The notes beneath the pieces were generated by a model. That model was given only the letters and a program-made list of their open reading frames with translations. It ran no database searches and had not been told where the DNA came from. 64,000 nucleotides of DNA from NCBI GenBank assembly GCA_002104945.1, contig MCFH01000002.1, positions 434,001 through 498,000 on the forward strand, written 5' to 3'. Made by a program: the position numbers and the translations under genes. The stretch comes from Piromyces finnis finn (lineage: Eukaryota > Fungi > Neocallimastigomycota). How positions within the stretch are numbered: position 1 is the stretch's first letter; each line of letters begins with the position of its first letter. Below are positions 27,570-62,129 of the stretch, in pieces.

Positions 27570-28254
27570 TAGTACAAAAAATAGTAAAGAAAAAGAAAGA
27601 AATAATTAATAATATATAACTATTTTAAAACAAAATAATAATAATAATAATTTTATATTAAAAAATTAAATACAAATTTTAAATTTATTTTATTTCCAAT
27701 ATTATTTTTATCCATTTATATTGATACAACACTTTTAATAATAATAAAAGAAAGTGAGTTATAAGTAATTCAATAAAATAAATTATTAGAATTTACAACT
27801 TACGTATTCCTTCAGTTGCAGTAACAGGGGATAGTACGAAGTGATTTCAAAAAAAAAAAAAAAAAAGTCGTTAATCCTATTAATTCCTTTTTTTTTTTTT
27901 TTTTTTGTTTATTTATTTCAATAATAAAAAATTCCAAATTATAATTCAATATCATAAAAACAATATAATTGAGAATAATAATACATACTTTTAAATAAAA
28001 GTTACGAAAAGTATTATTTTCTATTTTTAAATTAATAATAAATAAATTAAAAAAAAAAAAAAAAGAGTATTATTAAATTAATTTTTATAATTTATATAAT
28101 ATCAATGATATTAATGTAACTATTAGTAGGTAATTAGAATTAAACCATAAAAAATAAAGAATTTAAAAAAACAATTAGTTTTCTAATCACTAGAATAAAC
28201 ATTTTATAATATGAAATGATGAGTGTTATGTAATAATCTGAGAGTAGAAAAAAA

Positions 28255-28330
28255 TCCAAGTATTGCGCAATGGATGCTTGGTTAGTCTTTAAAGGAAAAT
28301 TATAAGGACTAAGCTCATGGTACTGAGCGA
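28255..28330 (+). ncRNA. Candidate structured cis-RNA motif (three adjacent hairpins), copy 1
   Basis: CCAAGTA/TGCTTGG (28256-28281), TTAGTCTT/AGGACTAA (28282-28312), GCTCA-TGGTAC-TGAGC (28313-28328); 72/76 nt identical to 56621-56696. Confidence 0.5.
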
Positions 28331-29532
28331 GTAGAGTTGATAATCTGAGTGTTAGTTGTTATATCATATTTTCCTTACACCTCCAACTTACATTAGATAG
28401 TAGTTGTTATTTATAACCTTTATAACATAATATTTAACTTTATATTGTTTGATTCGGTAGTATTAAATACTGATTTTGAATATTTTTGATTTCTTTTTAT
28501 TTTTAGCTTTCAAAGACATTTTGTTATTCCAGTTTATTACTTATTCTCTTTGTTCTTTTATTCCTTTCTACTCTTTATATGTTGATTAGTCAAATAGTTT
28601 TGTTTTTTTCAGTTAGTTTGTTATTCCTTTCATTTATTCTTGAGTTTCGTTGTGGGTGCGGCTTTCATTACTATAATCATAATTAATCTTTTTATTTTTT
28701 CGAGGGGCACGGCTTTTTTTTCTTTTTATGATTTTATATGATTCTAATAATATTTTTTTTATTTTTTATTTTCTGAAACTCTAGATTTTCCAAGGAATCT
28801 CTTTTCTACTAACATTCTTTTGTATACTTTTTCTATCTCTTTTCTATATATATATATTTTTTATACTTTATATTATATGTATATTTATATATTTGTATAA
28901 TTTTATTAGGTTTATTATGGACTCTAATGGTAAGTATTAACTCTCTTTTTTTTAAACTTTTTTGTTATCAAAGCTTCAATCCTGGAAAATCGAGTATTCT
29001 ATTCTTTATATTATAAATACTACTCTTGTTTCAATTTTATTTTTTAAAAATATTTTTCATGTTTACCCAAAATTCTTCATCTTTTTTTCATTATTTTTTG
29101 ATTTAACTACTTTTAACTCTTATTATCTCTCTATCTTCCAACACAAATAACTTTAATGAATGTTCAAATCCAACAATCAGAATCAACACAATACAATAAT
29201 CATTCAATAATTAATACAAATCTTATAAATATAAAAAGCTTTCAAAATACAGTTATAACACAGAAATTCAAAGTGATAGATATTCAAAATTTATTTTCCC
29301 ATTCAAAGTCTTCAGTAGAGTTAGAACTAAGTTTTTCAACAACTTAGCCAATTTTTCAATTATAAAAAAATTAAAATATTGTTTGACAAATAATCCACTA
29401 GCAATATAATATATTCGTCTTTACTAATACTATTTATATTCTACTAAATATTTTATTTCTTTATCTTATTTATATCAATATTTTCAATTCTTCAATTTAT
29501 TAATATCTATTGTCATAATAAGTTCTTTCAGA

Positions 29533-30920
29533 ATGAACAATACCAATTGTACTGTACCTACCTTACGTTGTGGCCTTCGTTTCTTCGGATCTAACTCCAA
29601 TAAATCATACCTAATTTTTATCCATGATCTTAGTTCATGGTTAAAACAACGACTAATGGAATTTCTTTTAAAGGACATTCAACCTTTCAATGATATTCTT
29701 CAATCCCTTACCAAAAAATATTCACAATCACTCAGTACTTATTTCATTCTAAAAGTTAATGGAAAATGTCCGCTTAAAGCCATGTTACTTATACACTCAC
29801 TTTCTAAAAAACTCCCTATCTCTAGTAAAATATCTTGGAAATTCATTGATATGCTCAAAAACAATAGATCATATAAAAACAAACGATCTATTAAACCCAC
29901 TACTGGTCCACTCTCTGACGATTTCTATTTTAGTCACTTAAGTTCTAATGCTTCCTTTTTCAATTTATGTACTTTCTGGAACATCAATGGTTGGAACCCT
30001 GAGAAAAAGGATGGTGTTTTATATTTCATCTCTGTTTTCAAACCTGTATGTGTCTGCCTTCAAGAAGTAGGTAACAGCCAATTCTTCTGTGGTAACGCAA
30101 TTTCCTCCCCATGCCTACCGAACTATAAGCCAGTACATAGACGTGCTAATCCTAAAGTTCCAGGTATGAGAGGACTTTACATTGATGTTCATAACTCTTG
30201 TTCCTTTACTCCTGAACCTCTTCTATATAAGTACATTATTTCAGTTACAATACTGTCATTTTGGAACCAGAGACGTACCATAGGTAATATTTACTTTCCG
30301 CAAACTAGATGGCCGGATGCTAGATTAATTGTCTTTGATGAACTTGATAAGTCGTTAACAACACATAACAAATTCAACCACCCAGCTATCCTTGTAGGAG
30401 ACTTCAATATGTCAGTTATTAAAATCAAATCTTATATTTCACAACACTTCCCTGATTGGACTATGGATGAGTTAGCTGGTAATAATTTTACCTGGGAAAA
30501 AGGATCTAAATCTTCATACATTGACCATATTATATACAACAAAGCTATGACAGAACATATAAACAAATCTTCAGTTTGCGAAGTTTTTCACAATGTTTCT
30601 GATTTTTGTCTTGTAAAAAAGACTCTTCTGATGGTTTCAAAAAGCTTAAGAAGACCTTTAAGTGGTCAAGTCATATCTGTAACACAAAGTGTTCTGACAT
30701 TCTTATTAGTAATCGCTTTGCTGTTCTAGCTTCTGAGCTTGAAGCTAATTGCAATAGCCTATCGGCTGACGATATGGTTTCCAAATTTTTAGATACTCCA
30801 AAAACTATCGGTAAAGATATAAAAGCCATTGTGCCTGCAGATTTAAAAGGTCCAGCATTCCATTGTCCTCAATACATCAAAAACTTATCACATGAAAAAC
30901 ACCTGGCTTACAAAAATATT
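29533..30920 (+). pseudogene. Retrotransposon ORF remnant: N-terminal domain plus AP-endonuclease, frameshifted near 30603 and truncated
   Basis: APE motifs FWNINGW, CLQEVG, IGNIYFP, LVGDFN, YIDHII and HNVSD (the catalytic His that should follow is lost at the frameshift); the second frame 30606-30920 continues with similarity to the post-endonuclease region of the full-length copy. Confidence 0.8.
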
Positions 30921-31828
30921 ATTTTATTTTTATTTTTTTATATTTAATTGCAATATATATATAATATTTAAATATCAACTATTAAATTTATATACTAATA
31001 ATGTTGATAATAATAATTAGTAAAAAAAAATAAGGATTTATGCAAGAAAGTAAACTATTTCTTTTTTCTTTTTTCTTAGAACATTATTAATAAAAATATA
31101 TCCAATTTTAAAGGTATTTTTTCTATTATATAAAAAAAATCAAATCCATAAAAAAATATCATTTATGTATAAATTGAAAATTTTGAATATATCAATAAAA
31201 TACTTATATATAATTTAATAAATTATAAAAAAAGAAAAAAGCTCTAGAGTATAATTACGTATTAGTATTTATTTTAAAAGCTTTTTTAACTAGCTACTAA
31301 AAAGGAAATGTACCAAATCGAAATAGGTTATATAAATTTTCCATCATATTAAATTATTAATTTAAATCATTTATTACTATCAAACTTTATTGAATATATT
31401 TAAACAGAAAAATGATAAACAAAAATGTTACACAAATCATTTGGTATTTTATGGTTAAGGTAACACAATAGTTGGTACAACAAAGATGTATATTCCTTAA
31501 ATTGTTACACTTTTTTTAATACTAATTATGCTAATCAAGAAGAATAAAAGGAAAATAAACAATATATTTATATCTTTAATAAACTTTTAAAAAATAAAAA
31601 TAAAAAAAACACATAGATATCATACTAAATTAAAGTATTTAAAAAATACTAAATTTCGTATCGATAATTTTTTTACACATTTACATTTCAAATATTTTTA
31701 TACCTATTTACTTATTATTATAAGATAGTAACTTTATTTCGATTCTTTTTAATGAGAGTGATTATTTTTTAGACATTTATGAATAAAAAGATAGTAATAG
31801 TAAATTTTGCTATTTATCAATAAAATAA

Positions 31829-56074: not shown

Positions 56075-56513
56075 ATGAACAAAAATCTTTAATATATCAA
56101 TTTAATAACATTTGTTTTAAATCTACTTAATTATATATACTAAAATTAGAGATATAACAAGAATTACACAAATTAAGAAATATAAATTAGTTACATATTT
56201 TTTAATTAAAAAGATGTAATAATAATAATAATAATAATAATAATTAATATCTATTATTATGAGGTTTTTTTTATTTTAATAATATTTATATTATTTAAGG
56301 ATTTTTTTTTTTTTTTTTATTTTATTTCTCAAACAAAAAAAAAATTAAATAAAATAATTTAAAAACTATTTATCACTTTATGGGAAATTTCTATTTCTAT
56401 ATATCATTAAAAACACAAAATAGCATGATTTTTATTATAAAATTTTTAATATTTAAATATATAAAAAAAATTTATATATTTTTATATACAAATATATTAT
56501 TTAGACTAAGGTT

Positions 56514-56525
56514 TGTACTATTGTA
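56514..56525 (+). repeat. Left target-site duplication TGTACTATTGTA
   Basis: Identical 12-mer at 62118-62129, immediately after the poly(A) tail. Confidence 0.9.
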
Positions 56526-56751
56526 CCCTCTTGGGAACGTGCCTTCATTTATTTAATAAATGGAATTTCTCAAGGGGGTCTACTCATGCTCATGGTACTG
56601 AGAGAGTAGAAAGAATTAAATCCAAGTATTGCGAAATGGATGCTTGGTTAGTCTTTAAGGGAAAACTATTAGGACTAAGCTCATGGTACTGAGCGATTAA
56701 AAAACATTTTATTCATCGAATTTAAGTATTTGATGAATAAGTTGAATGTTT
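56526..56751 (+). ncRNA. Candidate structured 5'-leader RNA (series of hairpins including the conserved triple-hairpin motif, copy 2)
   Basis: Stems CCCTCTTGGGAA/TTTCTCAAGGGGG, CTACTC/GAGTAG, CCAAGTA/TGCTTGG, TTAGTCTT/AGGACTAA, GCTCA/TGAGC and AAACATT-TTATTCATC/GATGAATAA-AATGTTT, read by eye. Confidence 0.5.
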
Positions 56752-57292
56752 GATATTCAGGTAAGTTTGTATAGTATTTAATTAGAAGAGTAATACATTT
56801 TGTTGCTGTATTTTTTCTTTTATTCATGTATTCATGTAGTACTACTCTTCTCTTGTAAGAATCCAATGTAGTCAACTTTAGCATTTGCATTGTATTTTTA
56901 TATTCATGTAGCTATTGTTGTATTGTTTCTTGTAAGAGACTGATTCACTCTACATCATGTAAAAATACTATTCACAAGCTTTCTGGTGTTGACATTCTTG
57001 ATTCAAATTTTTTTACCAATTTAAATATTTAATGAAAAGTAAAGTCAAACAAGTTTAGTGTCAAAAAGCGAATTGAATTTACTAACAACAAACCAAAACT
57101 AGAATTTTTAAAGAAAATTTACAACTAGAATTCAAAAAAAGAAACTTTAAACAAAGCATCGTAACAATTTTTGTACTATCCAGTACTTTTAAGAAGAGAG
57201 AGAGAGACAGATTTTTTTCCATATACGTTATATTTATATTTTTTATTAGTATTTATTTTATATTCAATATTTTTTAATTAGAATTTATTATC

Positions 57293-60200
57293 ATGTCAGT
57301 CCTTTATATTAAAGATAAGAATTATATCAGACGTGGTACCCGGTCTTATGGTATCCCCTTAGATGATATTCGCTCCTTCTTTATCCGTGGTATTCGATCA
57401 TGGTAAGTAATTATGCTATGGGAAAAACTCGAGGTTATTCTAGAAGATAAATTTAATTCAGTTATTAGTGTTAAATATTTTCAGACTTTCAATGATCACT
57501 TTTTCTTAGTCAAGGTTCATGGTTCATCGAAAGATTGTATTAAAATCTTACACATATTAAAGAAGAAACTTTCAGTTACCTCAATTTCCTTTTCAGCTCG
57601 TAGTAGAAGGAATCACAAATACACTTTTTCCACACTCAAACGTAAAATTTTAGTTTCTAATAAACATCAACATTCTATTCAACAATCATTTCAACAATCA
57701 GTTCAACAATCTCATCAACAATCCGATCTTCAACAAGATCTTCAACAAGTTTTCCATCATGAAAATATTCCAGATCTACAGCAAACACAATTTCAATCTC
57801 AACATTCAACAATTAATTCTAATAGTTCTATCAACTCTGATAACAGTTCAATAGTTGATAGTTCTTCAGTTTCACAGCCATCTAGTAATAGTTCTACTTA
57901 TTCCTCTGATGCATCATCCATTAATAACGATGACTTTAATAATAATAATAATAGCAACGATTCTTCCTCATCCAACAAGCCTGATAACTTTTCTTTTTGT
58001 CTTAGTTGGAACACCAATGGGTGGAATCACGAAAAGAGAGATAGTATTAGCTATTTCACAGTTATTTTCAAACCATTATTTTTATGTTTCCAAGAAACTG
58101 GTAATGGTTCTGGTTCGAATACAGATTATCCTTGTCGTGTTACTTTGCGAAACTATAGACACTTTTTCAAGAAAGCTGATGAATCAGTTCCTGGAATGAG
58201 AGGTTTATATTTAGGTTTTCACAATTCGTGTCAAGCCTCACTTGAAAACTTCTCTGGAAAGTATATTATTTCTATTTATACTTTTAGTCTTTGGAATAGA
58301 TTCAAATGCTCGATTGGAAATGTTTATATGCCTCATAGTCATCACAACATCTATGTTGATCATGCAAAGTTAGAAGTTCGCTTGTGGTTACAAACTCATT
58401 CATCCCATCCATCGATTCTTGTTGGTGATTTTAATATGTCTAAAGTTAAATTATCCAACTGGTTATCAACTAATGGATTAGGAGATTGGGAAATTCTTCC
58501 GCTTAGAGGGTCGACTATCTCTTGGACTCGAGGTGATCAATCTTCCGACATTGACCATGCTCTTATCAATTCGAAGATGAAAGATCTTATTCACTCAGGA
58601 TCATTTATAAATAATTTTTATCCTGTATCAGACCATAAGCCACTTCTTATTAATGGTAAAATTATTCCTATGGAAGATTTTTCTAATGACTTTAATGTTC
58701 CTAAGAAAATTCTGAAATGGAATAGATTAAAATGTATTGAGGAAAAGGAATCTATTCTTAGTCATAATAAATTCCAAATTCTTTCAGCAAAATTCAACGA
58801 TCCTAATGTTTCTACAGATGAACTTTCCAAAGAATTTACTTCAACTGCTTTTTCAATTGCAGACGAGCTCAGTATTACTTCAGCAAATAATGTTATAAAG
58901 TCTTCATTTCATATTTCACAACAAATTTTTAATCTTCAAAGAATCAAAATGAAGTTGTATAAGAGATTTAAAAAAGAAAGAATTTATGATATAGATGAAT
59001 TTATTAAAAGAATTAAAATCTACCGTAAGCTCATTGATTACATCCATAAAAGATGTAATGAATTTAGGAAGCAAGAATATCTTCATTGGATTAAAACAGG
59101 ATGTGAGTATATGAAGAGTCATAATCCTAAGAAGGCCTGGAAATGGATCAAGAAAACTGCAAAAATTGGAAAAGATTCTTTCTTTATTGCTCAACCAATT
59201 AAAAATAAAAATGGAGAATTAGTTGTTGCTACGGAAGAACAACTTGAAGTGTGGCATGATCATTTCGAAAACCTTGCATCAGATCCAAGTGGTGTAAGCC
59301 TTGATTTGGAGCATTGGTATGAAGAACCAACGAATAAACGTTTTTCACTTCCTATGCTTGATGAATGGGATATCAACCAAGATATTAGTATTGATGAAGT
59401 CAAGTCAGCTATCCTCTCTACTCCAAATTATAAAGCATCAGGTCCGGATGGTATTCCAATTGAATTTTACAAAGCATTAATTCCATCAAGTAATGATTCT
59501 AATAATGCTACAGGTAATAATTCTTCCGGTAATACCACTTCAGATAATGATGCTCATGGTTTAAATTTTATTCTTAAATTATTCAACCGTATTTGGGATG
59601 GAGACTTTCCCAACTCATGGAATGAATCCAGTATTGTTTCTATTCCTAAGAAGGGAGATTTGACAGATTGGGATAACTATCGAGGTATATCACTTATCAA
59701 TAATGGTATTAAGTTGATTTCCAAAATTGTCACCACTAGAATCTCAGAATATGGTTTAAAGAATAATTTCATTAGACCTGAACAATTTGGTTTTCGAAAA
59801 AAGGAAGAAAGTATCAGTCTTTTCATTTCAATCCAAGAAATATGCCGTAGACGTCAATTAGATAATAAAGAGACATATTTGGCCTTTTTAGATCTCAGGA
59901 AAGCATACGATTCAGTCCCAATCGGTAATATTCTCCATAAATTAGATTGTTTAGGAATCCGAGGTAAGAGTTTACAATTCATCAAAAATTTATATTTAAC
60001 ATCTAAGGCTAATGTCAAATTAGATGGACAATTCTCGAAATCTTTTGATGTGAAGAAAGGAGTCCGTCAAGGATGCCCTCTTTCTCCTATTCTCTTTAAT
60101 CTCTTTATTAATGATATATTTAAAGAGTGCGAAGATCTAGGAGTCAGTTTAGGTGACACTCAATGCTGTGGTGGACTTTTTGCAGATGATATAGTTATTT

Positions 60201-61826
60201 GTGCTCCAACAAGAGGATGCTTAAAAAAGATGCTTAGAAGAGTTAATGAATGGGCCTTGTATAATGAAATGGAATTTGGTATCCAGAAATGTTCAACGAT
60301 GGTGATTCGTCCTGAATCAATAGAAAATCAGATCAAGAGAGATCCAACATTTTACTTAGCAGGACAACCCATTCCAACTACTGATTGTTATACTTATCTT
60401 GGTGTTCCATTTGATAAGAATCTGTCCCCTGTCCCTTAAACCAGTTATTAAAACTCTTAATAACAAAGTTTTGAAAGGACTTTTTTCAGTCAGTAAATTC
60501 TTAAGAAATCCTAATATTCCTATTCCCTTCAAAAAGCTAGTACTTAACTCACAAGTGATTAGCAGAGTTTCATACTTTGCACCATTACTTGGATCCAACA
60601 AAGCTAGGTCTAGGATTGCTCAGAAGCATGTTAACAAAGGAATACGATGGGTTGCCGGAGTTCATAAAGCTGTATCGTTTATATCTTTATACTCTATTTC
60701 AAAAGATTTGAATATTCCTCCATTGTCAGCCAAATGTGCGTTAGCTCAGGTTAGATGTTTTAACAAATGGAAAAACTCAAATTGTATTATCTCACACCTT
60801 GTCAATTACATTCCTAAATTTAGAAAATACACGTGGTGCAAATCAAGTAGGACACTTGATAAAAAACTAAAGAAACATGGAGATGTTAAAGCAGTTAAAA
60901 ACTTTTATTGGAAAGATCTCAAAGGGAATTCAATCAAAGCGCAATATTATGATGATAATAAATTTATTGAAACTAAAGATTTTATTAAATTATGTTATGA
61001 GTACCCAGAGTTTGCCTATGGCTTCTACTGGCTATTGAAAGCAAGAAGCGGATACAAGTTGGATGCTAGAGTTGCCAAAGCTGCTAAATTTGTTGATCCA
61101 GTTTGTCCTAACTACTGTCCATGTTGCAAGTGTGGAGATCAAAGTATTAAACATTGGTTATTAGATTGTCCAACATTTAGAGATATCCGTATTAAACATT
61201 ATGATTCCATAGTCCAGCTATTAAATTTTTTCAGTCAACGTAATTCCAATAGTCCTATCAATAATAATGAAATTGATAATATCAGTAGAGATAGTAATAA
61301 CATTAATAGTAATAGTAACAATAGTAGTAATAACAATAGTAATAGTAACAATAGTAATAATAATAATAGTAGTAATAGAAATAGTAATAATAACAATAAT
61401 AGAAATAATAATATTAGTAATGATAGCAATAGTGAAGATAATAATTCTAATTTAGATAGTAATTTAGTTAATGATAGTAATAGTTCTAATAATCCGGTGA
61501 ATATTAATGTGTATGATTATTCTAGTGTGTGCAGTAAAATATTTAAATTCCTTCTTGGGGGAAGAAGTTTTAACAATATTAATTACAATTCAAGGGAATG
61601 GAAAGAACTTTGTAAGCGTCAGATTCAATCTGGTACTAACGAAGGAACACCATTCTTGACGGTAACCGCGGAACTTCTAACCAAAATCATGCCTTTTGCT
61701 ATTGGCCAGCAATGGTCAATGTTCAAAAGGTTTGAAGCAACATCCAAGAGCGTCAATGCTGAAGAAACAGTAAGACAGGCCAGGAGGGCCAGCGCAACCA
61801 ATGGAGATCATAATTTTGTTCCATGA
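57293..61826 (+). pseudogene. Retrotransposon polyprotein: N-terminal domain, low-complexity linker, AP endonuclease, reverse transcriptase, CCHC Zn knuckle
   Basis: APE: SWNTNGW, CFQETG, GNVYMP, GDFN, IDHAL, SDHKP. RT: GPDGIP, YRGISL, QFGFR, FLDLRKAYDSV, GVRQGCPLSPILFN, LFADD, YTYLGV. Zn knuckle CPCCKCGDQSIKHWLLDCP. In-frame ATG at 57293 with TAA at 57404; ORFs 57413-60439 and 60399-61826 are joined by removing a 7-bp duplication. Confidence 0.9.
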
Positions 61827-62063
61827 CAAAATTTTGATCTTTGGCTCGGTGTCCCATTGGAAGTCAAATACAATTATTATACTTTAGTATGATAGTGGCT
61901 TTCTTACTTTAATTAAAATTACTAGAATACATTATACCCAATTTTTATTCATTTGTGTTTATTTAAACATATTTTTTTTTATTTTTATTTTAATTTTAAT
62001 TTTTTTATTACATGTATTATAATTTTAATTAAATTAATAATAAAGTTTAAAATATTTGATGCC

Positions 62064-62117
<54 letters not shown>

Positions 62118-62119
<2 letters not shown>

Positions 62120-62129
62120 TACTATTGTA
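62118..62129 (+). repeat. Right target-site duplication TGTACTATTGTA
   Basis: Matches 56514-56525 exactly. Confidence 0.9.

What the first reader, a model, noticed from the sequence alone, without database searches (positions are those of the whole stretch)
56621..56696. Near-identical triple-hairpin leader motif shared by two highly divergent non-LTR retrotransposons: candidate new cis-acting RNA or ribozyme
Seen: the 76 nt at 56621-56696 match 28255-28330 at 72/76 positions. All four differences fall in loops or at a stem top, and the three adjacent stems (CCAAGTA/TGCTTGG; TTAGTCTT/AGGACTAA; GCTCA-TGGTAC-TGAGC) are preserved. The rest of the two leaders does not align, and the endonucleases are only ~40% identical by eye. 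Known: several non-LTR clades (R2, RTE, L1Tc and others) carry 5' HDV-like, hammerhead or twister ribozymes. I could not fit this motif to the hammerhead (no CUGANGA/GAAA), HDV, twister, twister-sister, pistol, hatchet or hairpin cores. Inference: it is a selected RNA module (self-cleaving ribozyme, translation-initiation element or RT/ORF-protein binding site) or an internal promoter, or the product of recent 5'-module exchange between families.
Basis: partly seen in the sequence, partly recalled or inferred. Interest (0 to 1): 0.82.

Follow-up and report, generated by a model that had tools for sequence, protein, structure and literature searches.

The report
Shared hairpin leader of fungal LINEs
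The 76-base match is the tail of a 172-base folded "head" at the exact start of two jumping-gene (LINE) families in the gut fungus Piromyces finnis. The fold is real and conserved, one family recently took the head from the other, and nothing shows that it cuts itself.

Summary
56621-56696 matches 28255-28330 at 72/76, and all four differences lie in predicted loops.

The window's family-A copy is 5'-truncated. Full-length A copies elsewhere share the whole first 172 nt with family B (94.8% identity). The rest of the two 5'UTRs does not align, and the ORFs are 39% identical.

The module is the 5'-terminal leader of poly(A) APE-RT LINEs in Piromyces finnis and is present in several hundred copies. 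It folds into five hairpins.
- **H1-H3 (nt 1-123):** this is the unit repeated in tandem in young B copies. Related LINEs from gut metagenomes keep the same three-hairpin layout from their first base, with different stem letters, a conserved H3 loop (GCGCAAUG) and G.U pairs on the sense strand. I read it as a selected RNA structure.
- **H4-H5:**

The A/B near-identity reflects recent leader capture, not ancient conservation. No Rfam family or known ribozyme core matches. Within the species, stems and loops vary equally.

Best reading: a structured 5' leader that most likely also carries the internal promoter. Self-cleavage is untested and unlikely.

The scan found the same leader earlier on other windows of this genome (s1-183467, s1-173604, s1-185491, s1-190345) and read it the same way.

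The parts
56526..56697 (+). 172-nt 5'-terminal leader module of the family-B LINE; the block shared with family A
   Evidence: The 5' ends of about 30 B copies coincide at 56525/56526. The target-site duplication abuts 56526. It is 94.8% identical to the family-A leader, with nothing else shared. It folds into 5 hairpins, z -5.5.
56526..56578 (+). H1: long hairpin whose base is formed by the element's first bases (CCCUCUUGGGAA / UUCUCAAGGGGG), with an inner hairpin
   Evidence: Each leader type examined starts with CCCY and closes on GGG(G), with different stem letters. The commonest young B subfamily carries an uncompensated G8>A.
56579..56610 (+). H2: two-tier hairpin with apical loop UGGUAC
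   Evidence: L159 keeps the loop UGGUAC with changed stems (CUCA/UGAG becomes CUCG/CGAG; the outer stem differs).
56622..56647 (+).
   Evidence: The loop GCGCAAUG is conserved in L159, L150 and L127, while the stem is completely different in L150/L127 (AACAUUAU/AUAAUGUU).
56648..56677 (+). H4: hairpin UUAGUCUU/AGGACUAA; seen only in P. finnis copies
   Evidence: Variants among P. finnis subfamilies mostly keep the pairs through one-sided changes. No counterpart was found in the external leaders.
56678..56694 (+). H5: GCUCA-UGGUAC-UGAGC; a duplicate of the apex of H2 and remnant of a partial older leader unit
   Evidence: Module nt 63-87 aligns to nt 154-178 at 87-88%. In family A the similarity to the H2 3' strand continues beyond the shared block (GAGCGAGTAGAG).
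56621..56696 (+). The 76 nt of the finding (H3-H5)
28255..28330 (+). Matching 76 nt in the family-A copy
28240..30921 (+). Family-A LINE fragment, equal to A nt 77-2809; 5'-truncated inside the leader and lacking its 3' part
   Evidence: 91.3% to the full-length A copy L121; 5' end at 28238-28240.
56526..62117 (+). Complete family-B LINE insertion, including the poly(A) tail at 62067-62117
   Evidence: 12-bp target-site duplication TGTACTATTGTA at 56514-56525 and 62118-62129. 3' end ...TTTGATGCCGTTAAAA.
57413..60439 (+). Main ORF piece with the APE endonuclease and reverse transcriptase. Intact relatives have one ORF of about 1370-1400 aa; in this copy it is broken by a stop after 57294-57404 and a frame change near 60400.
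   Evidence: Pfam Exo_endo_phos and RVT_1. The N-terminal piece is seen by alignment to relatives. ORF list.
56931..56950 (+). Second conserved 5'UTR block, TGTAAGAGnnTGATTCACTC, downstream of the leader; not part of the finding
   Evidence: Present in nine external loci (seven distinct elements) from both LINE clades, but not in P. finnis family A.

Best explanation
The motif is hairpins H3-H5 of a 172-nt leader that forms the exact 5' end of two poly(A), APE-RT, single-ORF LINE families (A and B) of Piromyces finnis.

Shown:
- The leader starts at the element's first base.
- Its first 123 nt (H1-H3) form a three-hairpin domain. Related LINEs of other gut-fungus-like DNA keep that domain with different stem letters, a conserved H3 loop and sense-strand G.U pairs.
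- That 123-nt unit is reiterated in tandem in the most successful young B copies.
- A and B share only this block, at about 95% identity.

Inferred:
- The domain is selected as a sense-strand RNA structure that acts in cis on the LINE RNA, for example by marking or shielding the 5' end, or by docking the element's own protein.
- The same DNA most likely holds the internal RNA polymerase II promoter that any autonomous LINE needs downstream of its start site. This would explain why extra units are favoured.
- The A/B near-identity comes from a recent capture of one family's leader by the other. The route was either reverse-transcriptase template switching, or nested insertion into a 5'UTR followed by read-through transcription.
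- It is not a member of any catalogued ribozyme class.
For: Element ends and shared block:
- 5' ends and target-site duplication.
- Shared block of 172 nt at 94.8%, with nothing else shared.
- ORFs 39% identical (RT 58%).

Copy number and tandem units:
- 955 genome hits to an 18-mer of the leader, which occurs twice per full leader.
- 44 of 59 sampled copies have a partial upstream unit joined ...GCTTGGT-G-CCCTC.
- Arrays such as [1-68][1-123][1-65][2-123][1-172].

RNA structure:
- Independent folds of six leaders outside P. finnis (four leader types) give H1, H2 and H3 from nt 1-2, with z -3.3 to -4.2; the P. finnis leader gives z -5.4 and a divergent P. finnis variant -3.9.
- On alignment A3, 93% of cells are paired against 40-49% when partners are slid. 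Four pairs changed on both sides, against 0.8 in shuffles (3/500).
- The covariance model built from P. finnis plus L159 finds L150 and L127.
- The sense strand folds more stably than the antisense strand in 9 of 10 leaders, with 42 against 10 G.U pairs.

Recent capture:
- L159 is 49% identical to A in the endonuclease region, yet its leader is far more diverged (stem letters and spacers changed). B-clade relatives carry other leader types.
- A B copy nested in an A 5'UTR with a 13-bp duplication shows that the raw material exists.
Against: - No experiment or transcript data were available, so the start site, the cap status and promoter activity are all inferred.
- Within P. finnis, stems and loops vary equally (3.1 against 3.8 minor alleles per site).
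- The commonest B subfamily carries an uncompensated G8>A in H1, plus disruptive changes at pair 10:44. H1 pairing is therefore not strictly required.
- Only four or five independent lineages are available. The external alignments are partly by eye, and the formal covariation count rests mostly on one divergent sequence (L159).
- The conserved unpaired motifs (ACGT, GGTAC, ATTGCGCAAT) are palindromic and could be DNA protein-binding sites rather than RNA loops.
- The direction of the transfer (A to B or B to A) is unresolved.
Confidence: 0.7

Rival explanations
1. The leader, or its first two hairpins, is a new kind of self-cleaving ribozyme. It would free the LINE RNA 5' end from read-through transcripts, as HDV-like ribozymes do in R2, RTE and L1Tc.
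For: - The compact fold begins at the exact first base of the element in every lineage.
- 5' ends are sharply defined.
- A possible 5-bp contact between the H1 internal loop and the H2 apical loop is present in four lineages.
- Precedent: the first 77 nt of L1Tc are both promoter and HDV-like ribozyme (PMC3185411, PMC3383444).
Against: - No Rfam ribozyme family matches, even at E<=10.
- The first base is C, not the G.U-closed P1 of HDV-like ribozymes. H1 is 10-12 bp long, and no P2 partner follows H2 (reading).
- There is no conserved CUGANGA/GAAA core across lineages.
- Tandem reiteration of the unit fits a promoter better than a cleavage module, because an upstream unit would be cut off.
- The loop-loop contact is not statistically distinguishable from chance.
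Confidence: 0.07
2. The module is purely a DNA-level promoter or monomer. The hairpins would be incidental inverted repeats, for example left by snap-back synthesis at former 5' ends or formed by palindromic factor sites, with no role as RNA structure.
For: - Tandem unit amplification in the most successful subfamily, as in mouse L1 monomers (PMC6454616, PMC9022269).
- The conserved unpaired motifs are palindromes. ATTGCGCAAT equals the textbook C/EBP-type bZIP site (my own knowledge, not tested).
- H1 tolerates mismatches in young copies, and stems and loops vary equally within the species.
Against: - The H3 stem is completely replaced while its loop is kept. Independent snap-back events would not keep the loop.
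- Sense-strand G.U pairs outnumber antisense ones 42 to 10, and the sense strand is more stable in 9 of 10 leaders.
- Inverted repeats spaced by 17-45 nt are not typical factor sites.
Confidence: 0.2
3. The 76 nt are a captured piece of a host small-RNA gene, or a target-site flank shared because both LINEs insert at the same repeated sequence.
For: Site-specific LINEs and small-RNA/LINE chimeras exist in other organisms (my own knowledge).
Against: - The motif lies 96 nt inside the B element, within the target-site duplication.
- All 59 copies classified from the first-listed genome hits, and the 60 copies fetched with A- or B-specific queries, are joined to a LINE leader or body.
- Flanks differ from copy to copy.
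- There is no Rfam match and no tRNA in the window.
Confidence: 0.03

Closest known systems
Pr77 hallmark of trypanosomatid L1Tc/ingi-clade retroposons (PMC3383444, PMC4748587, PMC4035085, PMC8190864)
   Same: A short block at the exact 5' end that is shared by different non-LTR elements of one host group. It acts at two levels: internal promoter as DNA and folded element as RNA.
   Different: Pr77 is 77 nt, folds as an HDV-like double pseudoknot and cleaves in vitro. Here there are 123-172 nt of side-by-side hairpins, with no HDV-like topology, no sequence similarity and no evidence of cleavage or promoter activity.
Mouse L1 5'UTR monomers (PMC6454616, PMC9022269)
   Same: Tandemly repeated units at the LINE 5' end, variable in number between copies and often with a truncated first unit. 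Extra units accompany the most active subfamilies.
   Different: Mouse monomers are about 200 bp, are known as promoters, and are not reported as conserved RNA folds. The unit here is 123 nt, and it is a conserved three-hairpin domain in relatives that carry a single copy.
HDV-like ribozymes at the 5' ends of R2, RTE and other non-LTR elements
   Same: A structured RNA that starts at the element's first base.
   Different: The defining nested double pseudoknot, the 6-7-bp P1 opening with G, and the P1.1/P2 strands are not found. Rfam HDV-like models give no hit.
R2 5' protein-binding RNA motif (my own knowledge of Christensen, Ye and Eickbush 2006; not checked here)
   Same: A folded segment of the 5'UTR RNA of a LINE that is bound by the element's own protein and governs the later integration steps. 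This is a candidate role for H1-H3.
   Different: The R2 motif is a pseudoknot inside a site-specific, restriction-like-endonuclease element. No binding data exist here.

Membership tests
HDV-like self-cleaving ribozyme | Match to the Rfam HDV-like covariance models | tested here: not met
   No match at the gathering score in the window, and none at E<=10 in 56450-56850.
HDV-like self-cleaving ribozyme | Nested double pseudoknot: a 6-7-bp P1 from nt 1, a P2 strand pairing 3' of P4, a short P3 and P1.1 | tested here: not met
   H1 is a continuous 10-12-bp stem. The segment after H2 has no complement to nt 8-14, and the inner hairpin has 7-9 bp (folds, read by eye).
HDV-like self-cleaving ribozyme | Self-cleavage immediately 5' of nt 1 | not testable with these tools
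   This needs in vitro transcription of flank plus leader.
Hammerhead ribozyme | Conserved core CUGANGA ... GAAA around a three-way junction | tested here: not met
   No Rfam hit. CUGAGAG in P. finnis H2 does not fit the core and is not kept in L159, L150, L127 or L126.
Twister, twister-sister, pistol, hatchet, hairpin, Varkud and other Rfam ribozymes | Match to the family covariance model | tested here: not met
   Searches listed only three chance-level hits (two microRNA hairpin models and the ylbH leader, E 0.5-6).
Pr77-type dual promoter/ribozyme | Shared 5'-terminal block across different retroposon families of one host group | tested here: met
   families A and B; relatives.
Pr77-type dual promoter/ribozyme | Promoter activity of the block, and HDV-like cleavage | not testable with these tools
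   No expression data or assay. The HDV-like fold was tested and not met (see the rows above).
L1-type tandem 5'UTR monomers (promoter units) | Head-to-tail repeats of one unit at the 5' end, variable in number between copies | tested here: met
   a 123-nt unit, and 44 of 59 sampled copies with at least one extra partial unit.
L1-type tandem 5'UTR monomers (promoter units) | Each unit drives transcription | not testable with these tools
   This needs a reporter assay or start-site data from P. finnis.
Selected structured RNA (candidate new Rfam-type family) | Same fold in diverged homologues, with compensatory changes and strand specificity | tested here: met
   Caveats: few lineages and partly manual alignment.
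Selected structured RNA (candidate new Rfam-type family) | Lower substitution rate, or pair-preserving bias, in stems among copies within the genome | tested here: inconclusive
   densities are equal in stems and loops. Shared variants in H2-H5 mostly keep pairs (81 cells against 10), but H1 carries frequent disruptive variants. Dead copies decay neutrally, so the test has little power.

The most novel reading that the evidence does not exclude
H1-H2, locked by a loop-to-internal-loop contact at the very first bases of the RNA, is a new compact RNA machine. It could be a self-cleaving ribozyme of an undescribed class, or an exonuclease-blocking or dimerising 5' cap-proximal fold. The self-complementary GUAC and GCGC loops could pair two LINE RNAs. 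On this reading the fold defines and protects LINE RNA ends in anaerobic fungi and promotes leader exchange between families.
Probability: 0.1. Interest if true: 0.8.

Novelty: new variant of a known kind. Interest (0 to 1): 0.45.

Why it matters
LINE 5'UTRs are usually treated as fast-evolving promoters without conserved RNA structure. This is a LINE group from an early-diverging, poorly studied fungal phylum whose RNA begins with a fold that is conserved, strand-specific and absent from catalogues. The same fold is also the unit of tandem amplification and of exchange between families.

It therefore offers a tractable case for asking what the 5' end of a LINE RNA does beyond carrying a promoter, for example end definition, protein docking or translation. 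It also shows how new LINE lineages are built by swapping heads. In practice, the leader is a sharp marker for annotating full-length LINEs in these AT-rich genomes.

Tried and rejected
- **Rfam.** Searched at the gathering threshold over the whole window and at E<=10 over the leader. Only chance-level hairpin hits came back.
- **tRNA scan.** No tRNA, so this is not a tRNA-targeted or tRNA-derived element.
- **First guess of a Dictyostelium TRE element.** I dropped this once the assembly statistics matched Piromyces finnis.
- **Target-site or host-gene origin.** Rejected, because the motif lies inside the target-site duplication and is always joined to a LINE body.
- **Cap-copied extra G at the unit junction.** Only the one inherited junction has it. 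Six other junctions have no extra base, or a different one, so it says nothing firm about capping.
- **'CCGAUGA' as a hammerhead or box-C/K-turn motif in some relatives.** It is simply the 5' strand of their H1-like stem.
- **A second case of leader swapping (L127 against L150).** Rejected. Their whole 5'UTRs align at 66%, in line with their coding divergence, so that leader is inherited rather than swapped.
- **A::B chimeras as proof of template switching.**
  - L006 is a nested insertion with a 13-bp duplication.
  - L005 and L024 are one locus that has been duplicated, and the DNA beyond that chimera's 3' end is uninformative.
  - The mechanism of capture therefore stays open.
- **MAFFT alignments of single hairpins across lineages.** These misaligned the stems and were not used for counts.
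- **H1-loop/H2-loop contact.** Shuffles reach the observed length in 6-60% of trials per lineage, so the contact is only suggestive.
- **nhmmer with the P. finnis leader.** It found only L159 among 52 external loci.

Full report
**1. The observation**

The two 76-nt stretches are 72/76 identical. A 32-nt core of the motif occurs only at these two sites in the window, against none expected. All four differences fall in predicted loops.

**2. Where this is**

The assembly has 56,455,805 bases in 232 contigs. Its three largest contigs are 2.63, 1.96 and 1.65 Mb, and the window is about 22% G+C. These figures match the published Piromyces finnis assembly (Table 2 of PMC5622200), as earlier scan notes also say.

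Both sites lie in non-LTR retrotransposons with an APE endonuclease and a reverse transcriptase.

- **Family B** is complete in the window at 56526-62117, including a poly(A) tail of about 51 nt. It is flanked by a 12-bp target-site duplication, TGTACTATTGTA. Its reading frame is broken by a stop near 57405 and a frame change near 60400, so this copy is dead.
- **Family A** in the window covers only A nt 77-2809, at 28240-30921.

The A and B ORFs are 39% identical over 681 aa, and 58% identical in part of the RT.

**3. The real extent of the shared block**

About thirty B copies start at 56525/56526. Full-length A copies elsewhere in the genome start with the same CCCTCTTGGG(A/T)ACGTGCC... sequence.

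A full-length A copy (L121) and the window's B copy share exactly the first 172 nt at 94.8%. Nothing else in 0.9-1.8 kb of 5'UTR aligns.

An 18-mer of the leader, which occurs twice per full leader, has 955 genome matches. That indicates several hundred leaders. Of the first 100 hits in genome order I fetched 60 that were not already in hand. Of the 59 that could be classified, 57 are B-type and 2 belong to a divergent subtype; the A-type hits on that list had been fetched earlier. None is free-standing.

**4. Anatomy**

The 172 nt fold into five side-by-side hairpins: H1 at nt 1-53, H2 at 54-85, H3 at 97-122, H4 at 123-152 and H5 at 153-169. The sense strand folds at -58 kcal/mol with z -5.5, and the antisense strand gives z -3.9.

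H5 is a copy of the apex of H2. In family A the similarity to H2 continues past the shared block. H5 therefore looks like the remnant of an older, partial unit.

In 44 of 59 sampled copies, nt 1-122 are repeated upstream and joined ...GCTTGGT-G-CCCTC. Some copies carry arrays such as [1-68][1-123][1-65][2-123][1-172]. Many other, independent partial 5' duplications exist.

**5. Relatives outside the genome**

A protein search gave 26 close LINE ORFs (43-69% identity) from JGI, ENA and NCBI metagenome or genome contigs. A scan of metagenome contigs gave 49 loci. They fall into a B-like and an A-like clade.

Where the 5' end is on the contig, the leader again begins with CCCY and folds from its first or second base into H1 (a long hairpin closing on GGG), an adjacent two-tier H2 and an H3. 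This holds for L159, L150/L127 and L126/L133/L176/L178. The Z-type leaders L128/L179 also begin with CCCC and open with an H1-like stem, though I folded only that first part. Each leader was folded on its own, with z -3.3 to -4.2.

Sequence similarity to P. finnis is detectable only for L159, by nhmmer (E 2e-12). A covariance model built from P. finnis plus L159 then also finds L150 and L127.

- **H3** is the clearest case. The loop GCGCAAUG is kept in P. finnis, L159, L150 and L127, while the stem changes from CCAAGUAUU/GAUGCUUGG to AACAUUAU/AUAAUGUU.
- **H2** in L159 keeps the loop UGGUAC with both stems changed.
- **H1** has a different stem in every lineage.

On the alignable set, 93% of cells pair, against 40-49% when partners are slid. 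Four pairs changed on both sides, against 0.8 in shuffles, with 3 of 500 shuffles reaching that number.

The sense strand is more stable than the antisense strand in 9 of 10 leaders, and it holds 42 G.U pairs against 10. This is what selection on a sense-strand RNA predicts, and it is hard to explain by DNA motifs alone.

H4 and H5 have no counterpart outside P. finnis.

**6. Why A and B are nearly identical**

L159 is as far from family A in protein (49% in the endonuclease region) as A is from B (about 40%). Yet its leader has diverged far more than the A and B leaders have from each other: stem letters and spacers differ throughout the alignment. B-clade relatives carry leader types that cannot be aligned at all.

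A 95% match, loops included, between A and B therefore reflects a recent transfer and not conservation.

Two routes fit the data. One is reverse-transcriptase template switching at the RNA 5' end. The other is insertion of one element into the 5'UTR of another, followed by transcription from the upstream leader.

The second kind of raw material is seen directly. At L006/L183, a 5'-truncated B copy sits in an A 5'UTR with a 13-bp duplication.

The direction of transfer is open, because the two hints conflict. The A-clade relative L159 has this leader type, which points to A as the donor. The B 5'UTR keeps the ancestral downstream block that A lacks, which points the other way.

**7. What it does**

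No Rfam family matches. The HDV-like and hammerhead definitions are not met: the first base is C, H1 is a continuous 10-12-bp stem, no P2 partner exists and no conserved core is present.

I find a possible 5-bp pairing between the H1 internal loop (GUGCC in P. finnis, GUAUC in L159, GUACU in L126/L133, CCGUA in L150/L127) and the H2 apical loop in all four lineages. However, shuffles often reach the same length, so this remains only a lead.

Within P. finnis, stems and loops vary equally, and the commonest B subfamily has an uncompensated G8>A in H1. Dead copies decay neutrally, so this neither supports nor refutes selection. It does show that perfect H1 pairing is not needed.

My reading, at about 0.7: this is a cis-acting structured 5' leader RNA, and its DNA also carries the internal promoter. 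That would explain both the conservation of pairing and the advantage of extra units. Alternatives are a purely DNA-level promoter with incidental hairpins (0.2), a new ribozyme (0.07) and a host-gene or target origin (0.03).

**8. Comparison and novelty**

The nearest described systems are:
- the trypanosomatid Pr77 hallmark, a shared 5' block that is both promoter and HDV-like ribozyme (PMC3383444, PMC3185411, PMC4748587);
- mouse L1 monomers (PMC6454616, PMC9022269).

This leader resembles both in role and position, but it shares neither sequence nor fold with them. A literature search found no paper describing non-LTR elements of Neocallimastigomycota; the only two hits mention the phylum in passing.

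I class it as a new variant of a known kind. The same leader was already reported by this scan from other windows of the genome, with the same reading.

Noticed in passing
window 56931-56962; also L126:519, L127:685, L128:420, L133:1477, L150:528, L159:758, L179:348, L181:16: A second conserved 5'UTR block, TGTAAGAGnnTGATTCACTCnAAnTCTTGTA, lies 330-720 nt downstream of the leader start where that start is on the contig. It is preceded by repeated CATGTAG / TTGTAAG motifs. LINEs of both clades from different sources keep it, but P. finnis family A lacks it. Its function is unknown.
   Followed up: partly
window 56708-56742: A further perfect hairpin (UUAUUCAUC...GAUGAAUAA) sits just after the shared block in family B only. 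Rfam gave only a chance-level microRNA-like hit (E 6).
   Followed up: no
L008 (G000:C178:882912 region): A B copy with an internal deletion that joins B nt 234 (window 56759) to window 59079. The 5' break lies 2-3 nt before a GTAAGT that looks like a splice donor. It could be a deletion or a processed variant.
   Followed up: partly
Many loci, e.g. L009, L010, L012, L017, L029, L042, L044: New LINE copies very often sit directly after the poly(A) tail of another copy (...TTTGATGCCGTTAAAAAA(n)|CCCTC...). The result is head-to-tail stacks, consistent with an endonuclease preference for A/T runs.
   Followed up: no
L005 (G000:C198:167491-170595) and L024/L123 (G000:C69): Two loci are 98.9% identical over more than 3.1 kb, flanks included. 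This is a segmental duplication or an assembly duplicate that contains an A-leader::B chimera.
   Followed up: partly
window 57294-57412: The true start of the B ORF (MSVLYIKDKNYIRRGTRSYGIP...) lies upstream of the ATG that the ORF list reports. In this copy it is cut off from the rest by a stop codon. Relatives have one continuous ORF of about 1370-1400 aa with an N-terminal domain of about 190 aa that has no Pfam match.
   Followed up: partly
L128:60-190 and L179:56-130: Another leader type (CCCCGAUGAAGAGG...) is present as two tandem units in L128. Tandem reiteration of the 5' unit therefore also occurs in relatives from other sources.
   Followed up: no
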